Shown here one piece after another: positions 10,020-63,183 of a stretch of 64,000 nt of DNA; position 1 is the stretch's first letter; every line of letters starts with the position of its first letter. The stretch lies in IMG/VR virus record IMGVR_UViG_3300027754_000034, positions 124,001-188,000 of that record; one strand, 5' to 3'. Below the pieces are notes generated by a model. It saw nothing but the letters and a program-made list of their open reading frames with translations, was not told the origin of the DNA and did not search any database. The translations under genes and the position numbers were made by a program.

Positions 10020-10044
10020 AGACGCAGCGCGCGCGCCGACTGTC
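10020..10044 (-). promoter_or_regulatory. ECF-like promoter motif (GACAG-N15-CGTCT) in a ~55-bp repeated cassette
   Basis: cgcccaccaggaagacgcagcgcgcgcgccgactgtcaccattctcttcagaat, near-identical at 15.57, 31.41 and 35.36 kb. Confidence 0.75.
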
Positions 10045-15577: not shown

Positions 15578-15602
15578 AGACGCAGCGCGCGCACCGACTG
15601 TC
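15578..15602 (-). promoter_or_regulatory. ECF-like promoter motif
   Basis: agacg-cagcgcgcgcaccga-ctgtc. Confidence 0.75.
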
Positions 15603-16820: not shown

Positions 16821-16845
16821 AGACGCGCTGATCGCGCCGATTGTC
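16821..16845 (-). promoter_or_regulatory. ECF-like promoter motif
   Basis: agacg-cgctgatcgcgccga-ttgtc upstream of the ligase. Confidence 0.7.
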
Positions 16846-19385: not shown

Positions 19386-19410
19386 AGACGCCGCGACACG
19401 CACGACTGTC
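19386..19410 (-). promoter_or_regulatory. ECF-like promoter motif
   Basis: agacg-ccgcgacacgcacga-ctgtc. Confidence 0.7.
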
Positions 19411-22653: not shown

Positions 22654-22678
22654 AGACGCAGCGACAGCGACAGTTGTC
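22654..22678 (-). promoter_or_regulatory. ECF-like promoter motif
   Basis: agacg-cagcgacagcgacag-ttgtc. Confidence 0.72.
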
Positions 22679-29319: not shown

Positions 29320-29498
29320 ACCCTTTATATTTCACCATCATCATCTTCGATTACATAATCGTGATGGGTTAGTTTTATTTTATTCTTGGTGCGTTCTAAA
29401 TCTAAAAGATATAAAGTATATTCTAATGCAGACACTTCTGTTTTTCTCTCTTCTAAGTATTTTCTAACCCTTCCCTCATCCCAGTATTTCATTTCCGG

Positions 29499-29571
29499 CA
29501 CCCCGTACGGGACTTGAACCCATTTACATGATTTGAAAGGACGCTGGCCTGACCGGGTAGTCTAACGGGGT
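29499..29571 (-). pseudogene. Degenerate tRNA-Glu(UUC)
   Basis: Acceptor ACCCCGT/ACGGGGT and T arm intact; anticodon stem GCGTC/ATCAT mostly unpaired. Confidence 0.7.
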
Positions 29572-31425: not shown

Positions 31426-31450
31426 AGACGCAGCGCGCGCGCCGACTGTC
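31426..31450 (-). promoter_or_regulatory. ECF-like promoter motif in repeated cassette
   Basis: Matches the 10020 copy over more than 50 bp. Confidence 0.75.
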
Positions 31451-54991: not shown

Positions 54992-56515
54992 ATGATTGAG
55001 TTTTTAGATTCTGAATTTACTCTTAGAGAGTTTGGTTATTCAGTTCCTAAAAGATCAGATGATAAATGCTATGCCAAATGCTCACTTGGGAATCATTCTG
55101 TAATAACCACGTTAAGAGCTTTGAAGAGAACTCTTAAGAAGCGTGGGTTATATAGATGTTCTAAGTGCGTTTCTAACTCAGAAGAAGGCAAGCGACACCG
55201 ATCTTTGCAGGCCATTACTTTATGGTCTAATCCAGAAATAGCAAGTTTGATATCTGAAAAATCTAAGGAGTTAGCGAATAGCGAGAAGGGAAGAGCACAA
55301 CGTTCTCTTCAATCAAAGAAGGCGTGGGAGTCAGAACCCTATTCCAGAGTTCAAAAAGACCGAATCGCTAGTTTATTTAAGTCAGAAGAACATCGTAAAT
55401 TAGTATCTGAACGGAATAAAAAGGATTACCAAGAAAATCCTATTAAATATATTGAAGATAAAGTATCCGCGATGTGGTCGGATGCTGCAAAGAAAAAACA
55501 TAAAGAAGCTCTGGCTAGTCCCGAATATAGAGAAACTCACCGCCAGTTAGCCAAAACCAGGTTTGAAAACGATGAGTATAAAGAAAAAATAGCTAAGGGA
55601 CTAGAAAACTTTCCTCGTGGTGGGAAGATGTCCACGCCGGAAAAGCAGGTAAAAGATATTTTAGAAGCTCTTGTACTAGAGTATGTTTATAACAAGGCGG
55701 TAGGCCCTTATAACTTTGACTTCTATATCGAAAAACTTAACCTATATGTTGAGGTACAAGGTGAATATTGGCACAGTCTACCAAATAACGAAAGACGAGA
55801 TCGGGCTAAGTTTTCATACCTAAGAATGGCTTTTCCAGAAGCCAAATTAATTTATCTGTGGGATTATGATTTTAACTCCGGAAACGCTGAATATAAAATT
55901 CGAGAAGCATTAGGGTTATCCCTTAATTCAGCAATCGAGTTTAAGTTCTCAGAATGTTCATTGAGAACAGTTAATTCAACTGAGGCTAAGCCGTTTCTTA
56001 ACAGCTGGCATTACGCGCAATATGGAAAGGCTGCTAAATTTCTCTATGGTGTTTATTTAAACGAGTTATTAATATCAGTTTGCAAAATTGGTCCGGTGAG
56101 CCGTAAAGAAGTCGCTTCGTCAGAAGGATTCACTCCTAAAGAATGCTTCGAACTTGATAGGTTCTGCATTCACCCTTTTTATCATAAGAAAAACCTCGGG
56201 TCTTTTCTATTGAGCCGATCGGTAAAAACTTTCTTTAATGAATTTCCGCAATCTAAAGCATTAGTTAGCTTTTCTGATTCTACCTTCGGGCATGAGGGAA
56301 CTATTTATCGAGCTAGTAATTGGACGGAAGTCAGAAAAGTAAAACCTGATTACATTTATGTGGCTTCTGATGGATGGATTTTACATAAGAAAACCCTATA
56401 TAATCAAGCCGTTTCGGTACATATGACCGAAACGGCTTATGCTTCTAAGCATGGTTATAAAAAAGTATTCGGAAAAGAAAAAACGAAATTCATCACCAAA
56501 CGCTCATGTCGATAA
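54992..56515 (+). CDS. Fusion: helical repeats, DUF559/Vsr-like endonuclease and Mom-like (GNAT) domain
   Basis: S.PE...FDFYI...VEVQGEYWH...RD..K; FL..WHY, ELDRFC, SFLLSRS, LVSFSD...GHEGTIYRASNW. Confidence 0.78.
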   Translation: MIEFLDSEFTLREFGYSVPKRSDDKCYAKCSLGNHSVITTLRALKRTLKKRGLYRCSKCVSNSEEGKRHRSLQAITLWSNPEIASLISEKSKELANSEKGRAQRSLQSKKAWESEPYSRVQKDRIASLFKSEEHRKLVSERNKKDYQENPIKYIEDKVSAMWSDAAKKKHKEALASPEYRETHRQLAKTRFENDEYKEKIAKGLENFPRGGKMSTPEKQVKDILEALVLEYVYNKAVGPYNFDFYIEKLNLYVEVQGEYWHSLPNNERRDRAKFSYLRMAFPEAKLIYLWDYDFNSGNAEYKIREALGLSLNSAIEFKFSECSLRTVNSTEAKPFLNSWHYAQYGKAAKFLYGVYLNELLISVCKIGPVSRKEVASSEGFTPKECFELDRFCIHPFYHKKNLGSFLLSRSVKTFFNEFPQSKALVSFSDSTFGHEGTIYRASNWTEVRKVKPDYIYVASDGWILHKKTLYNQAVSVHMTETAYASKHGYKKVFGKEKTKFITKRSCR

Positions 56516-57710
56516 TATCATCATGAACTGCCCCTGTTCCTATTAGGATAACAGGCACCCCAGCAGTTTCTTCTACTTTGTTAATGAAATCGCGGGATTC
56601 TTTAGAAAGACTCTTTAGAGCCTCCTTTCCTCCACGAATCCCATTATCATTCCAGTTTAGATATTGAACGAAGTTCACCGAGATCTTGGTAACCCCGTTT
56701 ACGCGAACGGCGTCTTCCAAGCCTATCCAAGAAAATGTAGAAACTCGTCGAATACGTTTTGTAACTGTTGTACGCTCGCGTTCTGCTAGTTTTTCTGCCT
56801 CTTCTTTAGGCATTCCCGCGTTTTTTGCTACTTGATCCCAGGTCAGCTCTTTACAATCATCGTAAAAGCCTCCTGAATACCCCTTCTGCTCTCCGTCATC
56901 CTCCACCACATTGCCTACGCGGATTGGGTAGGAGCGAAGATTCAGCCAAACATCACCCAGCATACTGGGAGGTACCGCCATGTAGTCCATAGCGGCTTGC
57001 AGGGTGCAGTTCCGACTCGTGCAGAATGGATAATGAGACCCATGGTCTATTGACAGTGCATAACCTTGGCTTCCTTCATGGAGCCAAGTATTACCTTCAT
57101 TAATCAATGAATGCGTGAGATTCCGAAATTCCATGGCAGACACCACCTGAATTTTCTCAAGTGCTTCTGCAATCCCGTTTTCTCCAATATATTTTTGGCA
57201 TTCCGAATCAGATGAAAGCAAGTCTGAGAACACATCTTCTAACTTGCGAGAAGCCACCACTGAGGCGTTTGGCTTTCGAAGAATCTTATCAGACAAAGCC
57301 GTTCCTGATCCCTGCATCGTGGAGGCAATGTGTTTGGTGGACTCCATACCATCTCGCTCACGAGAGGCATGTTCATCTGTCACATAAAGAGCTCGATCAT
57401 GAATGAAGAGACGAGGATTGCCACATTCATGCCATTCCTTCAAAAGCTGCTTCGGGGCAAATCCGGAACCTGGGCTTACAAATCCCACCATTCCAATCCC
57501 ATTCACCTTCTTAAGGATCAGAGCCGTTGGAATGGCCTTGGATACGAATTTTGTTCCATCTGCAAATATGGCGGAGTGACCGGCATTCGGAAGATTCGCG
57601 GAGGAGACGTTCACCACCCCATATTTATCAGCCAGGTATGTTGATATCTTTCCTTTCCCACTCGATCCCCACGCCTGATCCAAAATTACGTTAAATTTAC
57701 CGTTCTTCAA
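56493..57710 (-). CDS. purZ: PurZ-like 2-aminodeoxyadenylosuccinate synthetase (PurA paralog)
   Basis: WGSSGKGK (Ser where PurA has catalytic Asp13), PNAGH, EGSQG, YPIRVG (Ile, not Thr), TTVTK, NFVQY (not TKLD); TTG start with GGAGG. Confidence 0.8.
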   Translation of the reverse strand: MKNGKFNVILDQAWGSSGKGKISTYLADKYGVVNVSSANLPNAGHSAIFADGTKFVSKAIPTALILKKVNGIGMVGFVSPGSGFAPKQLLKEWHECGNPRLFIHDRALYVTDEHASRERDGMESTKHIASTMQGSGTALSDKILRKPNASVVASRKLEDVFSDLLSSDSECQKYIGENGIAEALEKIQVVSAMEFRNLTHSLINEGNTWLHEGSQGYALSIDHGSHYPFCTSRNCTLQAAMDYMAVPPSMLGDVWLNLRSYPIRVGNVVEDDGEQKGYSGGFYDDCKELTWDQVAKNAGMPKEEAEKLAERERTTVTKRIRRVSTFSWIGLEDAVRVNGVTKISVNFVQYLNWNDNGIRGGKEALKSLSKESRDFINKVEETAGVPVILIGTGAVHDDIIDMSVW

Positions 57711-57739: not shown

Positions 57740-58507
57740 TCAGTCTTTATCTTCAATATCATTTTTAACCGGCTTTAAATCCGAAATCAGAATTTCCGAT
57801 TCAACGCCCGAAACTCTATATAAGGTAGTTTTTTCGTATATCTTATCAAGATCTTTTTTCTCTACATATCTGGCTAGACTTCTACGAGGGTCATTTTTAA
57901 AATGACCCAAGGCAAATATTCGGGCACCCGCTAGTTGTTTAAAAGTGAATTCTCTCCCTTCTAATTTAAATTCTTTTCTTTTATGGTATCTATTTAGTTC
58001 TCTTACCTTCAAATGCCTTCTGAGAGAACGTTCACTCACGAACATCACTCGAATGGAAATGTCACTAGGTATTTTCTTAAATAATCTTAAGGAAATTCTC
58101 AAAGCATAATCGCATGCTAATGCAAAAGCATCTTGATATGAATTGGCCCTAATTAAGACACTCGCCATTCCGAAAGATTCATGCAATATGACTCGCCAGA
58201 TTTTCATATCGGGGTCTATACTTTCACCCACCAGCCTTCTAAGGGTATTTATTTTGTAATCAGGGAATGCTAATTTTTGAGCAGCATCAAATATCTGATC
58301 AAATTTAGTTTTCCCTGATTTTGCAGGATGAATCGGAATCTCTTCTAAAATACTATAATGTATAGCATTGTTTTTTATTAGTTCCGTGAGCACTTCCCTG
58401 AAGTATTCTTCATCCTTTTTACCAGACATTCTAAATATGCATTTTTCTATCGCTTCCAGGGCCTCTTCAGATAAAGGATCAACAGAACGAATTTTGGGAC
58501 TACTCAT
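57740..58507 (-). CDS. Hypothetical protein
   Basis: 255-aa ORF upstream of purZ. Confidence 0.6.
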   Translation of the reverse strand: MSSPKIRSVDPLSEEALEAIEKCIFRMSGKKDEEYFREVLTELIKNNAIHYSILEEIPIHPAKSGKTKFDQIFDAAQKLAFPDYKINTLRRLVGESIDPDMKIWRVILHESFGMASVLIRANSYQDAFALACDYALRISLRLFKKIPSDISIRVMFVSERSLRRHLKVRELNRYHKRKEFKLEGREFTFKQLAGARIFALGHFKNDPRRSLARYVEKKDLDKIYEKTTLYRVSGVESEILISDLKPVKNDIEDKD

Positions 58508-58865
58508 AAACTGTATAGTTTTAGCACAGAAGACAGACTCTGGGTACTTTACCCAATGGGATTAAATTACTTACTCGAAAAATTAATTTAATCCTAGCCT
58601 AATAAGGGAGCGGTTTTAAACCAGGAAGACCTAAGAAAAAAATAGGATCATCAGAATCGAGATTTTTCTGATTATCTGAAAATAAAGCATCTCATGATCC
58701 TTTATTTTCTTTTTCTTTTTTTGATCTGATCTTTTGTTAATTGAAATGAAATGGAAATGAACAAAGTAGATTCCTTCGTAGCAGGACACCCAGAGAAGGT
58801 AGAAGAGAAGTCAGTGAAGAAGAACGCCAAGTAAGTAGAACGCCAAGTAAGTAGAAGATTTAGAA

Positions 58866-59135
58866 ATGAAAGATTTTATTATAAGTAAAGAAGAGGGGAT
58901 ATTTCCTACTTTCTTTATTTTTATGGATCTTCCGAAGCATCTAGAGTATAGAGTGCAAAATATGCCCCTTTTAAAAGAAGGTATGATCGTTGATTTTAAT
59001 CTAAACATCAATGATCTTAGGTCTTTTAGACATCCCAAGATTATTAAGGGTAACCATATAATAAATAAATGTGTTTTCAAATATGGGGGAAAAAGGCCCG
59101 GTTTGGTGCAGTATGTGGAGTGGAAAGCTATTTAA
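58866..59135 (+). CDS. Hypothetical protein
   Basis: ORF track. Confidence 0.5.
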   Translation: MKDFIISKEEGIFPTFFIFMDLPKHLEYRVQNMPLLKEGMIVDFNLNINDLRSFRHPKIIKGNHIINKCVFKYGGKRPGLVQYVEWKAI

Positions 59136-59552
59136 AATTTATGAAACTTATGTAGGATAGTATTAAATAAAAATATTTATTGTGTAAATTGTATATGAGA
59201 AAGTATCCTCTTATATAAAGGGTCAATTTACGAAAAAATATTTAAATCACTATTCATTGAAGGGGGTCTACACACGAGAGCGTCACTTCTCTGGGATTCG
59301 CTGGTTATTTTCCTAAATGAAAGAATGGTGTGCCAATATGCTGAAGACTGGGGTATATGGGAAAGGAGCAGTGGGGAGAAATTTTATGAAAATTTGGCGA
59401 AAATTCTTATGCTTGTTTAGTATTTACTGAACAGATATTTACTTTACTATTGACTTTAAAAGAGGGCTATGTTAGACCTCTTTTATCCGATGTTGATCGG
59501 TTCTAACCATAACTCCGATAAGTCGGCGTAGCATTCGCCGCATGGGGACTAC

Positions 59553-60851
59553 ATGAATTCTGAAAAAGCCGATATTTCGGCAAGTTCTTCTGTGCGTGTC
59601 ATTATTCCTACAACTTCGGAATTTTTGACTAAATGGAATGCCTGGATTCACGGCAAAGTGAGCAAGCATTATAAGCGAGATAAAGAAAGAATCCCTGACA
59701 CTGCTCAAAGGGTAAGGCTTCGTTTACTCTCCAAGGATTTCATTTCTCGTTGGTTTTTTAAACATCTCACTGACGATCTCGTTGATCTGTCAGAGGCAAT
59801 CAGTATGACTGGCAATCCTAGGATTAATTTTTCACCTAGGATTAGCCCAGTTCATGGGGGTCGCAAAGATCCTAATTCTCTTTGGAGAATTTCAGATATT
59901 CTGAATTTCAGTAATTTTGATTATGAAAGGTATTTTTATAGTACTCAGAATCACACTATAGAGACTGATAAATTTCTTCGTTTATTGGGTTACGGATCTA
60001 AAAGTACTGTTACAGGTAAGTGGGAAATAAACACCGAGGATTATAGTGTACTGGAGTCATTATATCGACAAGGTAGAATCAAACCTGCTGAACTTACGGA
60101 ACATACTTGTTCAGAATCTAACATCAAGAAGAATTCTGACGGAACATGTTTAGTAGGTGGTTGTTCAGAAAAGCATTTTAGCAAGGGTTATTGTAAACCT
60201 CATTATAGAAGTACTCGCGCCAATGCATGTTCTGAATGTGAAAAAGGAAGAAATGTACTCAAAAGTAAGGGTATTTCTCTTGCTCATAGATGGAATGACC
60301 CTGAAGTAATAAAGTCTGTTTCGAAGCTTCGTTGGAACGATTCTCAGCTGGTTCCATTCTTGCGGGATTGGAAAAGTGGAAATCTTATTAAGCATCCACC
60401 TCGCTACATTATGAGAAAGCCTTCTGAGGCTACGGTGGATGCTGGATTACTCAAATACGCTAATATGGTGATTGATAATGACGTTTTCAATCATTTTAAG
60501 AGTATGATCAGATCGGATGATGTCTCTTACATCTCATTAGATATAAAATCTGACCCTGATGGGTCTACATTTGAGAAAATGTATTGGGAGACTAGTGAAG
60601 AAGGTTCAGGAAGAACAGCAGTATTTATCGATCATAACGCTCAAAATGAATTTATTGTGACTGAAGACAGATATACTATTATTTCATTAATAAGAAAGGC
60701 GAATTTAACACAGATTGAAGAGAATATCATCAAATTTGTGGATCTAGAAGAGTCTACCATATCTGAAGTAGCAGATAAATTAGGACTAGCCCCGGCTAAA
60801 ATTAATAAAATTCGTTTAAACGCTATGAATAAAATAAGAAGTTTAGCTTAA
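59553..60851 (+). CDS. ECF-like sigma factor with large Zn-finger-containing insertion in region 2
   Basis: DTAQ (DxxQ of sigma2.2), LLKYANMVIDNDVFNHFK (sigma2.3/2.4-like), LTQIEENII...TISEVADKLGLAPAKINKIRLNAMNKIR (sigma4). Confidence 0.65.
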   Translation: MNSEKADISASSSVRVIIPTTSEFLTKWNAWIHGKVSKHYKRDKERIPDTAQRVRLRLLSKDFISRWFFKHLTDDLVDLSEAISMTGNPRINFSPRISPVHGGRKDPNSLWRISDILNFSNFDYERYFYSTQNHTIETDKFLRLLGYGSKSTVTGKWEINTEDYSVLESLYRQGRIKPAELTEHTCSESNIKKNSDGTCLVGGCSEKHFSKGYCKPHYRSTRANACSECEKGRNVLKSKGISLAHRWNDPEVIKSVSKLRWNDSQLVPFLRDWKSGNLIKHPPRYIMRKPSEATVDAGLLKYANMVIDNDVFNHFKSMIRSDDVSYISLDIKSDPDGSTFEKMYWETSEEGSGRTAVFIDHNAQNEFIVTEDRYTIISLIRKANLTQIEENIIKFVDLEESTISEVADKLGLAPAKINKIRLNAMNKIRSLA

Positions 60852-60879: not shown

Positions 60880-63183
60880 ATGAATACTCGTATATCTGCT
60901 GCGGAGATCATCCATCTTTATAGAACCAGAATAGCGTCACTAGAGGATGATTTAGGAAATCGAGTAAGATTGTACCTGGAATCGAAATTTCCAGGTACAA
61001 ATATCGAATTATCACCTAAGCGAATAGGTGTCAGATTATATAAGATACTTAGCCAAAATACTAAAAGTGATATCGATACACTAATTGAATCACTATTTGA
61101 AAAGTTAGAGTCCAAATCTTTAAGTGCGAATGATGTGGACGAAGCATATGCGAATCTAATAACGGTTGCTAAGGGAGTGGCCTCTGGCGCGACGTCTTCC
61201 AAGGATCCCGTTCAGAAAAGTACAAAGACCTCCATCCCGGAGATCGATACAGATGCTATTAAGGCCAGAGATTTCGGAAATTCTCTAATCGCTGTCCTAC
61301 AAAGGAATTCATTTTTAGGGGAATTCGCTAATGATTCTCCAGAATCTATAGGCAGAAGATTAATATCGATTGCAAAGTATCAGTTGGCAGGGAATTTACA
61401 AAAGGCATATGATGCCATACAGGATTTACTGAAGTATTATGTAACTTCCGATTATGACTTTACGAAAAGAGCAGACAATATAAATCAGGCAATATTAAAA
61501 GTATTTGGAGATTTAAAAAGTAGATCGATGTCGCGCTCTAAATCTGAGCGTCAATATAAGCACAAGAGTGATATAGACGAGATGTCTGCACTGTTGTGGA
61601 AAAAGAATAAAGTAGAATCAAAATCACTGTTCAAAGGAATTCCAATAAAATGGACAAGTAAAGATGAACAGAGATTTAGGAGTTTAGGCGAAAAACTGAA
61701 GGGTGATGGAATAGATAGTTCTATCATAACTCCAAAGCCTCCAGATATGACTTCGGAGCGCAAAGAAGAATTCGCAGAGGAAGCATTTGGGACTCGTTCA
61801 GATAGTGGAGTATCTGAGGGAGGGATTGATAAAATACCGGAGGGGGCTCAAAAGTTTCTAGAAATAGGCGATGCTGAGGTAGATACTTTAAGTGGGGAAA
61901 AGCATTTCATAAAAATACTTCAGAGTCATTTTCCTGAAATTAAATCAACACTGGATGATAAAGAAAAATTATTATTTGAATTAATTGTAGAACAGGGATC
62001 AGGGTTTTACAATTCAGCGAAGGAAATAAAGAAAAAGGATGGTACTACGGAGATCGTAGAATCAAAGAAAAAATGGTCAGGGAGTTTGCTTCCTGGCGAA
62101 GAACATAATATGAATTTAGGAGGGGCATGGAAAGAAGCATGTCTGCTCGAAAATCCGACTTGGGTATCTTGGTATCAAGACAGACCTGGTCGGTTAACAA
62201 AATTACGAGAAGTTCTCTTAGATAAGATTCAGAGCTATCTCGATAATAAATTACCTAAAGAAGATTACGAGGTATTGTACTCAACATGGAATACTTCTGG
62301 TGGTAAGGTAATAGATAAAGATTTAGAAAGATTTCAATATGAAAGAGGTCGCTTAGAAAGGAAAAAACAAAAATTAGAGGAGAGTATAACGACCAGAGGT
62401 CTTTCTCCTCAAGAGGAAGCAGAAATTGAGCGTTATAACGATAAATTCATTTTAGAAGATGAATATGGTAAACTAAAGTACTATGATGATATTAGGGAAT
62501 TAACTCATAAAGAAGAACGGAGGTTAGAGGAACTGCCGTTACTTTTAAAGAAATATAATGTAAATCTTAATAGTATACCCAAGATTCCACCTAAGACGCC
62601 GACACCAGTGGAACATCTAATGTGGCTTAATAAATTAGAAGACACAAGAGCGTTAACTCCTTCTTTAGATATTCTGATGGATAAGGTATATGATGAAGTG
62701 TTGGATATGTTCGATGGGAAGGGGTCAATAGTCCGTTCCATAATTTCGGAAATGCCTTCTTCTTCGAATCTGTCTCTATTAAATTCGATGGCGAAGGGAT
62801 TACAAAAAGTACGAGAAGAGAAAGTACGAATAAAGGATCTTCCTGCTCAGAAGGAAAAAGAATCCGAGAATGGATCAAGAGATTTTGAAGATTCAGAAGA
62901 AGACTCGGTAAAGAAAGAATCCATTAAAAAAATTAAAGATATGCTTGCTCAAATCAAGCGAGCTGTTCCCCTAAAATATCTAGATCTCTTGAATGATGTA
63001 AAAGCATTTGCAGATGGAAACCCTCCATCTAGACTCCGAGATAAGAATTTTTGGAAGGATCTGGAGCCCAGTGACTTTCGAGATATTTTAAATGCAATAC
63101 CTGGAGCGAATCAATTATTAGAAGAATCTTTAGGTGTCAAAAAGGCGTCATACCTAGAACGGATTGCACTAAGTATCATGTAA
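60880..63183 (+). CDS. Large protein with degenerate sigma2/sigma4-like segments and terminal 'RIA' motifs
   Basis: RRLISIAKYQLAGNLQKAYDAIQD; LDDKEKLLFEL; N-terminal YRTRIAS, C-terminal KKASYLERIA. Confidence 0.45.
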   Translation: MNTRISAAEIIHLYRTRIASLEDDLGNRVRLYLESKFPGTNIELSPKRIGVRLYKILSQNTKSDIDTLIESLFEKLESKSLSANDVDEAYANLITVAKGVASGATSSKDPVQKSTKTSIPEIDTDAIKARDFGNSLIAVLQRNSFLGEFANDSPESIGRRLISIAKYQLAGNLQKAYDAIQDLLKYYVTSDYDFTKRADNINQAILKVFGDLKSRSMSRSKSERQYKHKSDIDEMSALLWKKNKVESKSLFKGIPIKWTSKDEQRFRSLGEKLKGDGIDSSIITPKPPDMTSERKEEFAEEAFGTRSDSGVSEGGIDKIPEGAQKFLEIGDAEVDTLSGEKHFIKILQSHFPEIKSTLDDKEKLLFELIVEQGSGFYNSAKEIKKKDGTTEIVESKKKWSGSLLPGEEHNMNLGGAWKEACLLENPTWVSWYQDRPGRLTKLREVLLDKIQSYLDNKLPKEDYEVLYSTWNTSGGKVIDKDLERFQYERGRLERKKQKLEESITTRGLSPQEEAEIERYNDKFILEDEYGKLKYYDDIRELTHKEERRLEELPLLLKKYNVNLNSIPKIPPKTPTPVEHLMWLNKLEDTRALTPSLDILMDKVYDEVLDMFDGKGSIVRSIISEMPSSSNLSLLNSMAKGLQKVREEKVRIKDLPAQKEKESENGSRDFEDSEEDSVKKESIKKIKDMLAQIKRAVPLKYLDLLNDVKAFADGNPPSRLRDKNFWKDLEPSDFRDILNAIPGANQLLEESLGVKKASYLERIALSIM

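What the first reader, a model, noticed from the sequence alone, without database searches (positions are those of the whole stretch)
59553..60851. Split ECF-like sigma factor with a ~230-aa Zn-finger insert inside region 2
Seen: a sigma2.1-2.2-like segment (...RIPDTAQRVRLRLL), then a long insert with CLVGGCSEKHFSKGYCKPHY and CSEC, then a sigma2.3-2.4-like helix (GLLKYANMVIDNDVFNHFK) and a clear sigma4 HTH at the C-terminus. The insert falls where ECFs carry the -10 specificity loop. Inference: a novel phage sigma architecture; a candidate reader of the GACA/CGTC motif or of later promoters.
Basis: inference. Interest (0 to 1): 0.7.

Follow-up and report, generated by a model that had tools for sequence, protein, structure and literature searches.

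The report
Huge-phage sigma factor with split sigma2
This gene of a huge phage very probably encodes a promoter-recognition (sigma) subunit for the host RNA polymerase. A conserved 222-residue zinc-binding, DNA-binding-like domain sits where ordinary small sigma factors have the short loop that reads the -10 promoter element, an architecture I found described nowhere.

Summary
It belongs to a full-length family of at least 182 proteins from huge-phage contigs of up to 436 kb, always in the same gene neighbourhood.

The C-terminus (361-432) is a clear sigma domain 4. The sigma2 domain is split. Residues 13-72 carry regions 2.1-2.2, with invariant D49 and Q52. Helix 295-325 is region 2.4. Several sigma2 crystal and NMR structures superpose on these two pieces together (Z about 7, rmsd 2.0 Å over 69 residues). 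Weak but colinear profile matches agree.

The 222 residues between them (73-294) fold confidently on their own and match no known whole domain. They hold:
- a MerR/Xis-like winged helix;
- a second HTH-like unit;
- an invariant His-Cys3 zinc site;
- a basic tail.

No phage RNA polymerase was found in the contig or in four complete relatives. The likeliest role is therefore redirecting host RNAP. Which promoters it reads is unresolved. The protein is ECF-like in architecture but fails ECF sequence thresholds. Verdict: a new variant of a known kind.

The parts
59553..60851 (+). Whole gene: 432-aa sigma-like protein (stop codon at 60849-60851)
   Evidence: ORF. 182 full-length homologues. AF2 model with mean pLDDT 83.8.
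59589..59768 (+). N-terminal half of sigma2 (residues 13-72): helices 21-37, 44-60 and 63-71, with region 2.1-2.2 and invariant D49 and Q52
   Evidence: VIA matches to sigma2 domains start at model residues 13-20. hhalign puts residues 33-63 on the region 2.1-2.2 motif EDLLQEV of the phage's own canonical sigma2 protein (P 0.062). Mean pairwise identity is 0.64.
59748..59768 (+). RWFFKHL (residues 66-72), the most conserved motif of the family, immediately before the insert. Candidate DNA-melting or base-stacking aromatic residues.
   Evidence: R66, W67, F68, K70, H71 and L72 are invariant in 41/41 sequences. The role is inferred by analogy with the aromatic residues around the specificity loop of sigmaH (10.1101/534826).
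59769..60434 (+). Inserted domain (residues 73-294, 222 aa)
   Evidence: It folds alone with pLDDT 90.9 and pTM 0.79. No whole-domain match was found in PDB, AFDB clusters, BFVD or the ESM Atlas. hhalign finds no similarity to canonical sigma2. Mean pairwise identity is 0.43-0.62.
59775..59927 (+). First module of the insert (residues ~75-125): MerR/Xis/small-terminase-type winged helix
   Evidence: VIA gives 7lxs_A at Z 5.6 and Pukovnik Xis at Z 4.0. BldC, TipAL, TnrA, SoxR and others score Z 3.2-3.8, all on insert residues 1-53. The matches are weak but uniform.
59955..60101 (+). Second module (residues ~135-183), HTH-like, containing the conserved LESLYRQGR.KP.ELTEH block
   Evidence: Sub-threshold Pfam MarR match at 160-186 (E 0.0048). 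Mean pairwise identity is 0.62. The fold assignment is tentative.
60102..60239 (+). Universal zinc site: H184, C186 ... C226, C229
   Evidence: All four residues are invariant in 41/41 sequences. Metal binding is inferred, not measured.
60147..60203 (+).
   Evidence: Present all-or-none in 21 of 41 relatives. It matches the N-terminal zinc motif of PHROG 5351 'HNH endonuclease' (residues 198-225, E 2e-4). No nuclease catalytic motif is matched.
60240..60434 (+). Basic C-terminal part of the insert (residues ~230-294; pI 10.7 computed on residues 233-294), with KLRWNDSQL and YIMR
   Evidence: Composition. R260, W261, D263, Q265, L270, R271, N277, P283 and R288 are invariant.
60435..60527 (+). 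C-terminal half of sigma2 (residues 295-325): the region 2.4 helix
   Evidence: TIGR02937 sigma70-ECF aligns residues 297-430 to model positions 50-163 of 165 (E 2.4e-4). hhalign puts 301-322 on residues 88-109 of the canonical sigma2 family (P 0.0074). The VIA sigma2 matches end at model residues 316-351.
60528..60632 (+). Acidic, poorly conserved linker (residues 326-360) in the position of the ECF sigma2-sigma4 linker
   Evidence: pLDDT is 40-58. pI is 4.2. Mean pairwise identity is 0.28.
60633..60848 (+). Sigma domain 4 (residues 361-432), the -35-type HTH
   Evidence: VIA gives Z 10.8 and rmsd 1.7 Å to S. aureus SigB in 8x6g_H, with 24 chains at Z>=8, all of them sigma4 domains. The A1 profile matches FliA sigma4 at E 2.5e-4. 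Pfam Sigma70_r4 matches 24 of 41 members, best E 3.6e-9.
59510..59552 (+). About 40 nt of conserved non-coding leader directly upstream of the start codon
   Evidence: This is the only part of the 417-nt upstream gap with DNA similarity in relatives L007 and L012 (87% and 86% identity). Its function is unknown.

Best explanation
The gene encodes a phage sigma factor of two-domain, ECF-like build that redirects the host RNA polymerase core to a class of phage promoters.

Its sigma2 domain is assembled from two separated pieces. Residues 13-72 supply regions 2.1-2.2, including the D-x-x-Q motif that in other sigma factors docks on the beta-prime clamp helices. Helix 295-325 supplies region 2.4. 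Its sigma4 (361-432) would bind the beta flap and a -35-like element.

The short specificity loop, which in ECF sigmas captures the flipped -10 base, is replaced by the invariant aromatic motif RWFFKHL plus a self-folding 222-aa domain. That domain holds a MerR/Xis-like winged helix, a second HTH-like unit, a His-Cys3 zinc site with an optional nested ribbon, and a basic tail.

Shown here by computation: the gene, the family, the sigma4 fold, the split sigma2 fold in the model, the autonomy and conservation of the insert, and the failure of the Pfam beta, beta-prime and T7-like RNAP models to find a phage RNAP.

Inferred: binding to host core; that the insert adds DNA contacts at or near the -10, spacer or discriminator region, or pre-organises the melting surface as sigma1.2 does in primary sigmas; and that zinc is bound.
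For: Sigma4:
- VIA Z 10.8.
- The family profile hits FliA sigma4 at E 2.5e-4.
- Pfam Sigma70_r4 matches 24 of 41 members.

Split sigma2:
- VIA aligns isolated sigma2 domains across model residues 13-20 to 316-351 with only 69-96 aligned residues, so the alignments must skip the insert.
- The matches are SigC 2o7g_B (Z 7.1, rmsd 2.0 Å, 69 of 89 residues), sigmaE 2mao (87 aligned residues of a 106-residue entry), SigR 1h3l_B (74 of 78), ShbA, phiEco32 sigma 9m7y_F, T4 gp55 7d7d_F and AR9 gp226 7s01_A.
- No non-sigma fold spans that range in the top 50.
- All 50 top Foldseek PDB hits and all 30 Swiss-Prot hits are sigma factors.
- TIGR02937 aligns residues 297-430 to model positions 50-163.
- Two independent hhalign matches to the phage's own canonical sigma2 family are colinear and in register. 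They bracket a 13-aa loop there and a ~237-aa segment here. The insert itself matches nothing.
- Language-model features place the protein among Sigma70_r2, ECF and r4 clusters.
- D49 and Q52 are invariant.

Insert as a functional domain:
- It folds alone at pLDDT 90.9.
- It is conserved as strongly as sigma2, while sigma4 and the linker evolve fast.

Host RNAP dependence:
- No beta, beta-prime or T7-like RNAP was found in the contig or in four complete relatives.
- Group-2 jumbo phages are described as lacking an RNAP and encoding sigma factors (PMC7824862).
- The gene sits at the head of a block of replication and nucleotide-metabolism genes.
Against: - No sequence model detects the N-terminal piece as sigma2. 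Pfam Sigma70_r2 gives no hit.
- A profile of residues 10-74 searched against 1.84 billion proteins recovers only this family.
- The hhalign P-values are weak (0.062 and 0.0074).
- VIA Z of about 7 lies in the range the tool warns can arise from common helical arrangements.
- Foldseek's sequential alignments place ECF sigma2 on residues ~215-325 instead.
- The complex prediction with E. coli beta-prime 220-334 and beta 825-945 returned 'no answer', so it is not evidence either way.
- The host is unknown.
- No promoter class could be tied to this protein.
- Highly divergent phiKZ/AR9-type RNAP subunits could escape the Pfam models, and the T7-like search had no positive control.
Confidence: 0.72

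Rival explanations
1. The protein is a sigma4-type HTH transcription factor rather than a sigma factor. Only the C-terminal HTH would be sigma-derived. The N-terminal bundle and the middle domain would form a novel DNA-binding or regulatory module that never docks on RNAP core as a sigma2.
For: The only sequence hits that stand on their own are to region 4. The N-terminal profile finds no canonical sigma in 1.84 billion proteins. The same genome has a protein with two sigma4-like HTHs and no sigma2, so sigma4 modules are reused in this lineage.
Against: Seven different sigma2 structures superpose on the N-terminal piece together with helix 295-325. TIGR02937 extends from sigma4 back through region 2.4. 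The two hhalign matches are colinear. The D-x-x-Q motif is invariant.
Confidence: 0.13
2. The sigma2 is contiguous, formed by residues ~215-325. Residues 1-214 would then be an N-terminal extension, so nothing is split.
For: Foldseek aligns full-length ECF and group-3 sigmas to query residues ~161-431 or ~214-431. The PDB alignments are of similar length, 200-260 columns.
Against: Those alignments have rmsd above 17 Å and TM below 0.4. On the full model, no VIA sigma2 match starts near residue 215; all start at residues 13-20. The insert-only model, which contains 215-294, gives no sigma2 hit, and hhalign finds nothing. The helices in 215-294 are only 8-14 residues long. The D-x-x-Q motif lies at 49-52.
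Confidence: 0.05
3. The protein is the promoter-specificity subunit of a divergent phage-encoded multisubunit RNA polymerase, as gp226 is in phage AR9, and is not a partner of host RNAP.
For: AR9 gp226 is among the structural matches (7s01_A, Z 6.7). Some jumbo phages encode such polymerases (PMC7598289, listed).
Against: No beta or beta-prime homologue was found in the contig or in four complete relatives. The genome has T4-like clamp-loader and gp55-like genes, typical of RNAP-less group-2 jumbo phages. A canonical sigma4 implies a bacterial-type beta flap.
Confidence: 0.05
4. The middle segment is a selfish insertion, an intein or a homing-endonuclease remnant, and not a functional part of the protein.
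For: The nested ribbon matches the zinc motif of an HNH-endonuclease PHROG and is present in only about half of the relatives. Weak fold hits to endonuclease VII and HNH proteins cover the same ~30-70 residues.
Against: The 170-250-aa insert as a whole is present in every homologue and is conserved at 43-62% identity, as high as sigma2. No intein, HNH catalytic or LAGLIDADG domain is detected. The boundaries lack intein splice residues, as read from the sequence. At most the small nested ribbon could be a captured module.
Confidence: 0.03

Closest known systems
ECF (group 4) sigma factors, e.g. E. coli sigmaE and M. tuberculosis SigH, SigL and SigC
   Same: They share the two-domain sigma2-linker-sigma4 build with no sigma1.1 or sigma3. 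They also share a four-helix sigma2 with the D-x-x-Q motif in region 2.2 and a sigma4 HTH. These are the best structural matches.
   Different: In ECFs the specificity loop is about 8 residues (sigmaH 72-79). Here ~222 residues of folded domain occupy that position. Sequence models fail: Pfam Sigma70_r2 gives no hit and TIGR02937 is below its cut-off. No neighbouring anti-sigma is evident. The protein is 432 aa against about 170-200.
Phage sigma factors: T4 gp55, phiEco32 gp36 (9m7y chain F), and this phage's own gp55-like 210-aa protein
   Same: All are phage-encoded, highly diverged sigma2-containing factors that retarget host RNAP. They match structurally at Z 6.2-6.6. The gp55-like family co-occurs in the same genomes.
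   Different: None has an insertion in sigma2. gp55 lacks a sigma4.
The non-conserved region (NCR) of primary sigma70/sigmaA
   Same: It is a precedent for a large lineage-specific domain inserted within the sigma2 module of a sigma factor (established knowledge; named as sigmaNCR in 10.1101/534826).
   Different: The NCR lies between regions 1.2 and 2.1, away from the -10-reading loop. It is helical and is not a zinc or HTH module. No similarity was detected.
ECF sigmas with added zinc or Cys-rich domains, e.g. the ECF52 zinc-finger fusions (PMC5826349, abstract)
   Same: An ECF-type core is combined with a zinc-binding module.
   Different: From my knowledge of ECF classification, those modules are terminal extensions with regulatory roles rather than insertions inside sigma2.

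Membership tests
Sigma-70 superfamily | Sigma domain 4 (HTH that binds the -35 element and the beta flap) | tested here: met
   VIA Z 10.8 with rmsd 1.7 Å. The family profile matches FliA region 4 at E 2.5e-4. Pfam Sigma70_r4 matches 24 of 41 members, best E 3.6e-9. This member alone scores 18.2 bits, below the 24.1 cut-off.
Sigma-70 superfamily | Sigma domain 2 fold (regions 2.1-2.4) | tested here: met
   The test is met in the predicted structure only. Seven sigma2 structures align over residues 13-20 to 316-351 at Z 6.2-7.2. Colinear weak profile matches support this. The fold is interrupted by a 222-aa insert.
Sigma-70 superfamily | Recognition by the curated sequence models for region 2 (Pfam PF04542) | tested here: not met
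   No Sigma70_r2 hit for the whole protein, for residues 1-80, or for any of 41 members.
Sigma-70 superfamily | Binds RNAP core through the beta-prime clamp helices and directs promoter-specific initiation | tested here: inconclusive
   Complex prediction returned 'no answer'. Biochemistry is not possible with these tools.
ECF (group 4) sigma factors | Only sigma2 and sigma4, joined by a linker, with no sigma1.1 or sigma3 | tested here: met
   The model shows sigma2 pieces, a disordered acidic linker at 326-360, and sigma4. No sigma3 match was found.
ECF (group 4) sigma factors | Score above the cut-off of the sigma70-ECF model TIGR02937 | tested here: not met
   20.7 bits against a cut-off of 42.9. 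Only model positions 50-163 are matched.
ECF (group 4) sigma factors | Short specificity loop between the third and fourth sigma2 helices that reads the flipped -10 base | tested here: not met
   The loop position is occupied by RWFFKHL plus a 222-aa domain. The ECF loop is about 8 residues.
ECF (group 4) sigma factors | Cognate promoters with AAC-like -35 and CGT-like -10 elements, often with a co-transcribed anti-sigma | tested here: inconclusive
   GACA-N16-CGTCT promoter-like sites exist in this genome, and a GGAA...CGT(C/T) class exists in relative G005. Their reader is unknown. No anti-sigma was recognised among the neighbours.

The most novel reading that the evidence does not exclude
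The insert may be an adaptation for transcribing a modified genome. Every relative keeps this gene two genes away from a PurZ-type 2-aminoadenine synthetase, which has Ser in place of the PurA catalytic Asp.

If these huge phages replace A by Z, every -10 A:T pair gains a third hydrogen bond and the flipped 'master' base changes. In that case this sigma, with its -10-reading loop replaced by a zinc/HTH DNA-binding domain and an invariant aromatic motif, would be a dedicated initiation factor. Its job would be to let host RNAP melt and read Z-DNA promoters.
Probability: 0.1. Interest if true: 0.9.

Novelty: new variant of a known kind. Interest (0 to 1): 0.6.

Why it matters
Sigma factors are among the best-understood DNA-reading proteins. 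In all solved ECF and primary sigma complexes, the -10 'master' base is captured by a short loop between two sigma2 helices. A conserved family that places a 25-kDa zinc/HTH domain at exactly that point would imply one of two things. Either promoter DNA is recognised or opened in a different way, or a sigma-borne accessory DNA reader is at work.

The family would also provide a natural scaffold showing that sigma2 tolerates large insertions there. It marks a whole clade of uncultured 180-436-kb phages that carry four sigma-like genes and PurZ. Their transcription programme is unknown.

Tried and rejected
- **tblastn against 50,697 GenBank phage records:** no match.
- **Pfam on sub-segments** (1-80, 73-130, 125-190, 180-300): nothing beyond a weak MarR hit.
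- **N-terminal profile (residues 10-74) against 1.84 billion proteins:** only the same family, with no canonical sigma and no unsplit relative.
- **Fold searches with the insert alone** in PDB (Foldseek and VIA), AFDB clusters, BFVD and the ESM Atlas: no whole-domain match, only sub-module resemblances.
- **Complex prediction with E. coli beta-prime clamp helices and beta flap:** verdict 'no answer', so it is not used as evidence.
- **Linking the protein to the GACA-N16-CGTC motif by comparative genomics:**
  - The exact motif is not enriched in five relatives.
  - It has no multi-copy match in IMG/VR.
  - A stricter extended pattern is absent from G001-G004.
  - De novo dyad discovery found a homologous class in G005 but a different promoter type in G001.
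  - All four sigma-like genes are present in all three genomes, so no assignment is possible.
- **Genome-wide dyad counts:** dominated by period-18 coding repeats and uninformative.
- **Rfam scan of the upstream gap:** nothing credible.
- **MazG as a partner of PurZ:** found in this genome only, so uninformative.
- **Intein or homing-endonuclease reading of the insert:** rejected, as set out under the rival explanations.
Full report
**The observation**

The window holds an ATG-started ORF at 59553..60851 (+) of 432 aa.
- RIPDTAQRVRLRLL lies at residues 46-59.
- CLVGGCSEKHFSKGYCKPHY lies at 199-218.
- CSEC lies at 226-229.
- GLLKYANMVIDNDVFNHFK lies at 298-316.
- A C-terminal HTH follows.

The window is bases 124001-188000 of a 257,205-bp IMG/VR virus contig that CheckV rates 60% complete.

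**The gene is real and widely conserved**

A search of 5.8 billion proteins gave 182 homologues at E<=1e-3. Nearly all cover 96-100% of the query. They are 369-571 aa long and come from contigs of up to 436 kb. A few are auto-annotated by JGI or NCBI as sigma-24 or sigma-70 family proteins.

None is found in 50,697 GenBank phage records. At 50% clustering the N-terminal profile defines about 33 clusters.

In 14-16 IMG/VR contigs of 35-436 kb the neighbourhood is the same. The order is a PurZ-like gene (-), a 255-aa ORF (-), an 89-aa ORF (+), this gene (+), a ~767-aa ORF, and then small ORFs, two of them (69 and 60 aa) cysteine-rich.

**The sigma4 domain**

- Pfam Sigma70_r4 matches residues 384-429 below threshold in this member. 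It matches 24 of 41 aligned members, with best E 3.6e-9.
- The family profile hits FliA region 4 in the PDB at E 2.5e-4.
- An AlphaFold2 model built on a 41-sequence alignment has mean pLDDT 83.8.
- VIA-align superposes residues 360-432 of the model on sigma4 of S. aureus SigB at Z 10.8 and rmsd 1.7 Å. All 24 chains at Z>=8 are sigma4 domains.

**The sigma2 domain is split**

The same VIA search returns isolated sigma2 domains whose aligned range in the model runs from residues 13-20 to 316-351 but contains only 69-96 aligned residues.
- M. tuberculosis SigC 2o7g_B: Z 7.1, rmsd 2.0 Å, 69 of 89 residues.
- E. coli sigmaE 2mao: Z 7.2, 87 aligned residues of a 106-residue entry.
- S. coelicolor SigR 1h3l_B: Z 7.1, 74 of 78 residues.
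- ShbA, the phiEco32 sigma (9m7y_F), T4 gp55 (7d7d_F) and AR9 gp226 (7s01_A) also match.

These numbers fit only an alignment that uses the N-terminal helices (21-37, 44-60, 63-71) together with the long helix 296-325 and skips what lies between. No non-sigma fold spans that range in the top 50. All 50 best Foldseek PDB hits and all 30 Swiss-Prot hits are sigma factors.

Sequence evidence is weaker but consistent.
- NCBIfam TIGR02937 (sigma70-ECF) aligns residues 297-430 to model positions 50-163 of 165. E is 2.4e-4 and the score of 20.7 bits is below the 42.9-bit cut-off. This leaves model positions 1-49 to be supplied elsewhere.
- I built a profile of the phage's own canonical, PF04542-positive 210-aa sigma2 protein family.
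- hhalign places residues 33-63 of this protein on its residues 44-74, so that PDTAQRV falls over EDLLQEV (P 0.062).
- hhalign places residues 301-322 on its residues 88-109, so that KYANMVIDNDVFN falls over HYVYMVANNVCIN (P 0.0074).
- The middle domain matches nothing.

The two matches are colinear. They bracket a 13-residue loop in the canonical protein and about 237 residues here.

D49 and Q52 are invariant. This D-x-x-Q pattern is typical of region 2.2. Protein-language-model features also place the protein among Sigma70_r2, ECF and r4 clusters.

Against this stand four points.
- Pfam Sigma70_r2 never fires.
- A profile of residues 10-74 finds only this family in 1.84 billion proteins.
- Z of about 7 is within the range the tool says helical bundles can reach by chance.
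- Foldseek's sequential alignments lay ECF sigma2 on residues ~215-325.

I treat that last reading as a rival. I consider it unlikely, because those alignments have rmsd above 17 Å, and because on the full model no VIA sigma2 match starts near residue 215. In addition, the insert-only model gives no sigma2 hit.

**Where the insert sits**

In ECF sigmas the compact four-helix sigma2 carries a short specificity loop, residues 72-79 in sigmaH. This loop forms the pocket for the flipped -10 base, and aromatic residues at its edges stack on that base (10.1101/534826).

Here that position holds the most conserved motif of the whole family, R66-W67-F68-x-K70-H71-L72, invariant in 41/41 sequences. It is followed by residues 73-294.

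**What the insert is**

Folded alone on its own alignment, it gives pLDDT 90.9 and pTM 0.79, so it is an autonomous domain. No library holds a whole-domain match.
- Foldseek against the PDB gives E>=2.
- The best VIA score is Z 5.6.
- AFDB clusters give E>=0.16.
- BFVD gives E>=0.39.
- The ESM Atlas gives TM<=0.31.

Its first ~50 residues resemble MerR/Xis/small-terminase-type winged helices, weakly (Z 3.2-5.6) but uniformly. Residues ~135-183 carry the strongly conserved LESLYRQGR.KP.ELTEH block and a sub-threshold MarR match.

H184, C186, C226 and C229 are invariant, which suggests a structural zinc site. Nested inside it, 21 of 41 relatives carry the extra C199-C204-H208-C214-H217 ribbon, all-or-none. 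No nuclease catalytic motif is matched.

The last 62 residues of the insert are basic, with pI 10.7.

Mean pairwise identity by region is as follows.

| Region | Mean pairwise identity |
|---|---|
| Two sigma2 pieces | 0.63-0.64 |
| Insert modules | 0.43-0.62 |
| Linker | 0.28 |
| Sigma4 | 0.32 |

The insert is thus under constraint as strong as sigma2. That argues against an intein or a selfish insertion. Some relatives also carry a C-terminal extension after sigma4.

**Genomic setting and likely partner**

Pfam models for RNAP beta, beta-prime and T7-like polymerases find nothing in this contig or in four complete relatives of 377-436 kb. The T7 search had no positive control, and very divergent phiKZ-type subunits could be missed.

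The genome encodes three further sigma-like proteins.
- A 210-aa gp55-like sigma2 protein.
- A 328-aa RpoD-like sigma.
- A 271-aa protein with two sigma4-like HTHs.

All three are present in relatives G001 and G005, and the RpoD-like one is the least conserved at 26-30% identity.

Downstream of the gene lie clamp-loader, ribonucleotide reductase, helicase/ExoV and exonuclease genes. This profile fits the group-2 jumbo phages, which are described as lacking an RNAP and relying on their own sigma factors (PMC7824862). Redirecting host RNAP is therefore the most likely function.

A complex prediction with E. coli beta-prime 220-334 and beta 825-945 was returned as 'no answer'. I do not use it.

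**Promoters**

The GACA/CGTC motif is real. About 25 copies of (c)GACA(G/A)TCGG-N9-GCTGCGTCT lie in GC-rich islands, often followed by GGTGGGCG and CA-rich leaders. All are on the minus strand at genome 131-163 kb, which is window 7-39 kb. They lie upstream of a DNA ligase gene, an HNH endonuclease gene, an ATPase gene and many small unknown ORFs. The geometry (GAC-N17-CGT) is ECF-like.

- The exact motif is not enriched in relatives G001-G005. It has no multi-copy match in IMG/VR.
- De novo dyad discovery in the closest relative, G005, whose orthologue is 52% identical, found a clearly homologous class. It reads GGAA(A/G)TCGG-N..-CGT(C/T)-N..-GTGGGCG and has about 45 copies.
- G001, whose orthologue is 48% identical, lacks this class. 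It has CGTAAATT-N13/14-YGTAA promoters instead.
- A second, -10-only-looking class, GTAAAGTA, lies 4-10 nt before start codons and tRNA 5' ends in this genome. Related GTAA motifs occur in G001 and G005.

The -10 element CGTC is kept between this genome and G005 while the -35 changes. That matches the slow sigma2 and fast sigma4 evolution of this family.

**Comparison with what is known**

The protein works like an ECF-type or phage-type alternative sigma factor. It should not be filed as an ECF member, because the sequence thresholds and the short specificity loop were both tested and not met. The nearest precedent for a large domain inside the sigma2 module is the sigma70 non-conserved region, but that lies between regions 1.2 and 2.1.

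My literature searches found no description of a sigma factor with a domain inserted at the specificity loop, and no account of this family. The library is limited to open-access papers and preprints.

**Verdict**

- The structural interpretation, a split sigma2 with a zinc-binding insert at the -10-reading position, is supported at about 0.7 confidence.
- ECF membership and the promoter assignment are not established.
- This is a new variant of a known kind, of real interest to transcription and phage biologists. It rests entirely on computation.

Noticed in passing
window 56493-57710 (-): The adenylosuccinate-synthetase homologue matches PHROG 1211 '2-aminooxy adenylosuccinate synthetase' at E 5.8e-60. 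Its P-loop reads GSSGKGK, with Ser where PurA has the essential Asp13. That is the PurZ signature according to PMC12884076. It is conserved two genes from the sigma gene in all 14 relatives with enough flank. This huge-phage clade may therefore carry 2-aminoadenine (Z) DNA.
   Followed up: partly
window ~7000-39100 (-), e.g. 10020-10044, 15578-15602, 16821-16845, 19386-19410, 22654-22678, 31426-31450: About 25 copies of a GC-rich two-block promoter-like motif, (c)GACA(G/A)TCGG-N9-GCTGCGTCT, all on the minus strand. They are often followed by GGTGGGCG and CA-repeat leaders. A homologous GGAA...CGT(C/T) class has about 45 copies in relative G005 and is absent from G001.
   Followed up: partly
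window 58545-58552 and 59440-59447 (both read GTAAAGTA on the - strand); 13 intergenic copies genome-wide: The 8-mer GTAAAGTA lies 4-10 nt before several start codons and 8-10 nt before two tRNA 5' ends. This resembles a -10-only (T4-late-like) promoter that yields leaderless or near-leaderless transcripts. One copy lies 37 nt upstream of the 255-aa ORF. Another points leftward from inside the 417-nt gap upstream of the sigma gene, with no obvious target gene.
   Followed up: partly
window 29497-29571 (-): ARAGORN calls a tRNA-SeC with anticodon TCA. It could be a TGA-suppressor tRNA, as seen in some huge phages with recoded stop codons. The ORFs examined here read normally in code 11.
   Followed up: no
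G000:C1:206102-206917 (+), outside the window (L023:19102-19917): A 271-aa protein has two tandem sigma4-like HTH domains and no sigma2 (TIGR02937 positions 110-162 matched twice). It is 63-71% identical in relatives G001 and G005. It may be a gp33-like co-activator or a sigma appropriator.
   Followed up: no
G000:C1:83574-84206 (+) and 104656-105642 (-), outside the window: Two further sigma genes are present. One is a 210-aa gp55-like sigma2-only protein (PF04542) with 261 homologues in the same phage clade. The other is a 328-aa RpoD-like sigma whose best NCBIfam match is the cyanobacterial RpoD subfamily.
   Followed up: partly
window 60880-63183 (+), 57740-58507 (-) and 58866-59135 (+): The three conserved syntenic neighbours of the sigma gene (767, 255 and 89 aa) have no Pfam, PHROG or NCBIfam assignment. 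The 767-aa protein is only 24-33% identical in relatives.
   Followed up: partly
relatives of the sigma protein, e.g. P0067, P0069, P0032 and P0102 (alignment A1, columns ~630-730): Many family members carry a ~70-100-aa C-terminal extension after sigma4. By eye its conserved ...ARTDLF..L...G.S...I......P..RVVAAINR... pattern resembles a DnaA-domain-IV/Trp-repressor-type HTH. The window's protein lacks it.
   Followed up: no
G000 and G001, genome-wide: There is very strong period-18 dyad over-representation, for example CTGG-N14-CTGG at 55 observed against 6 expected in G000. This points to long coding tandem repeats somewhere in these genomes. I did not locate them.
   Followed up: no
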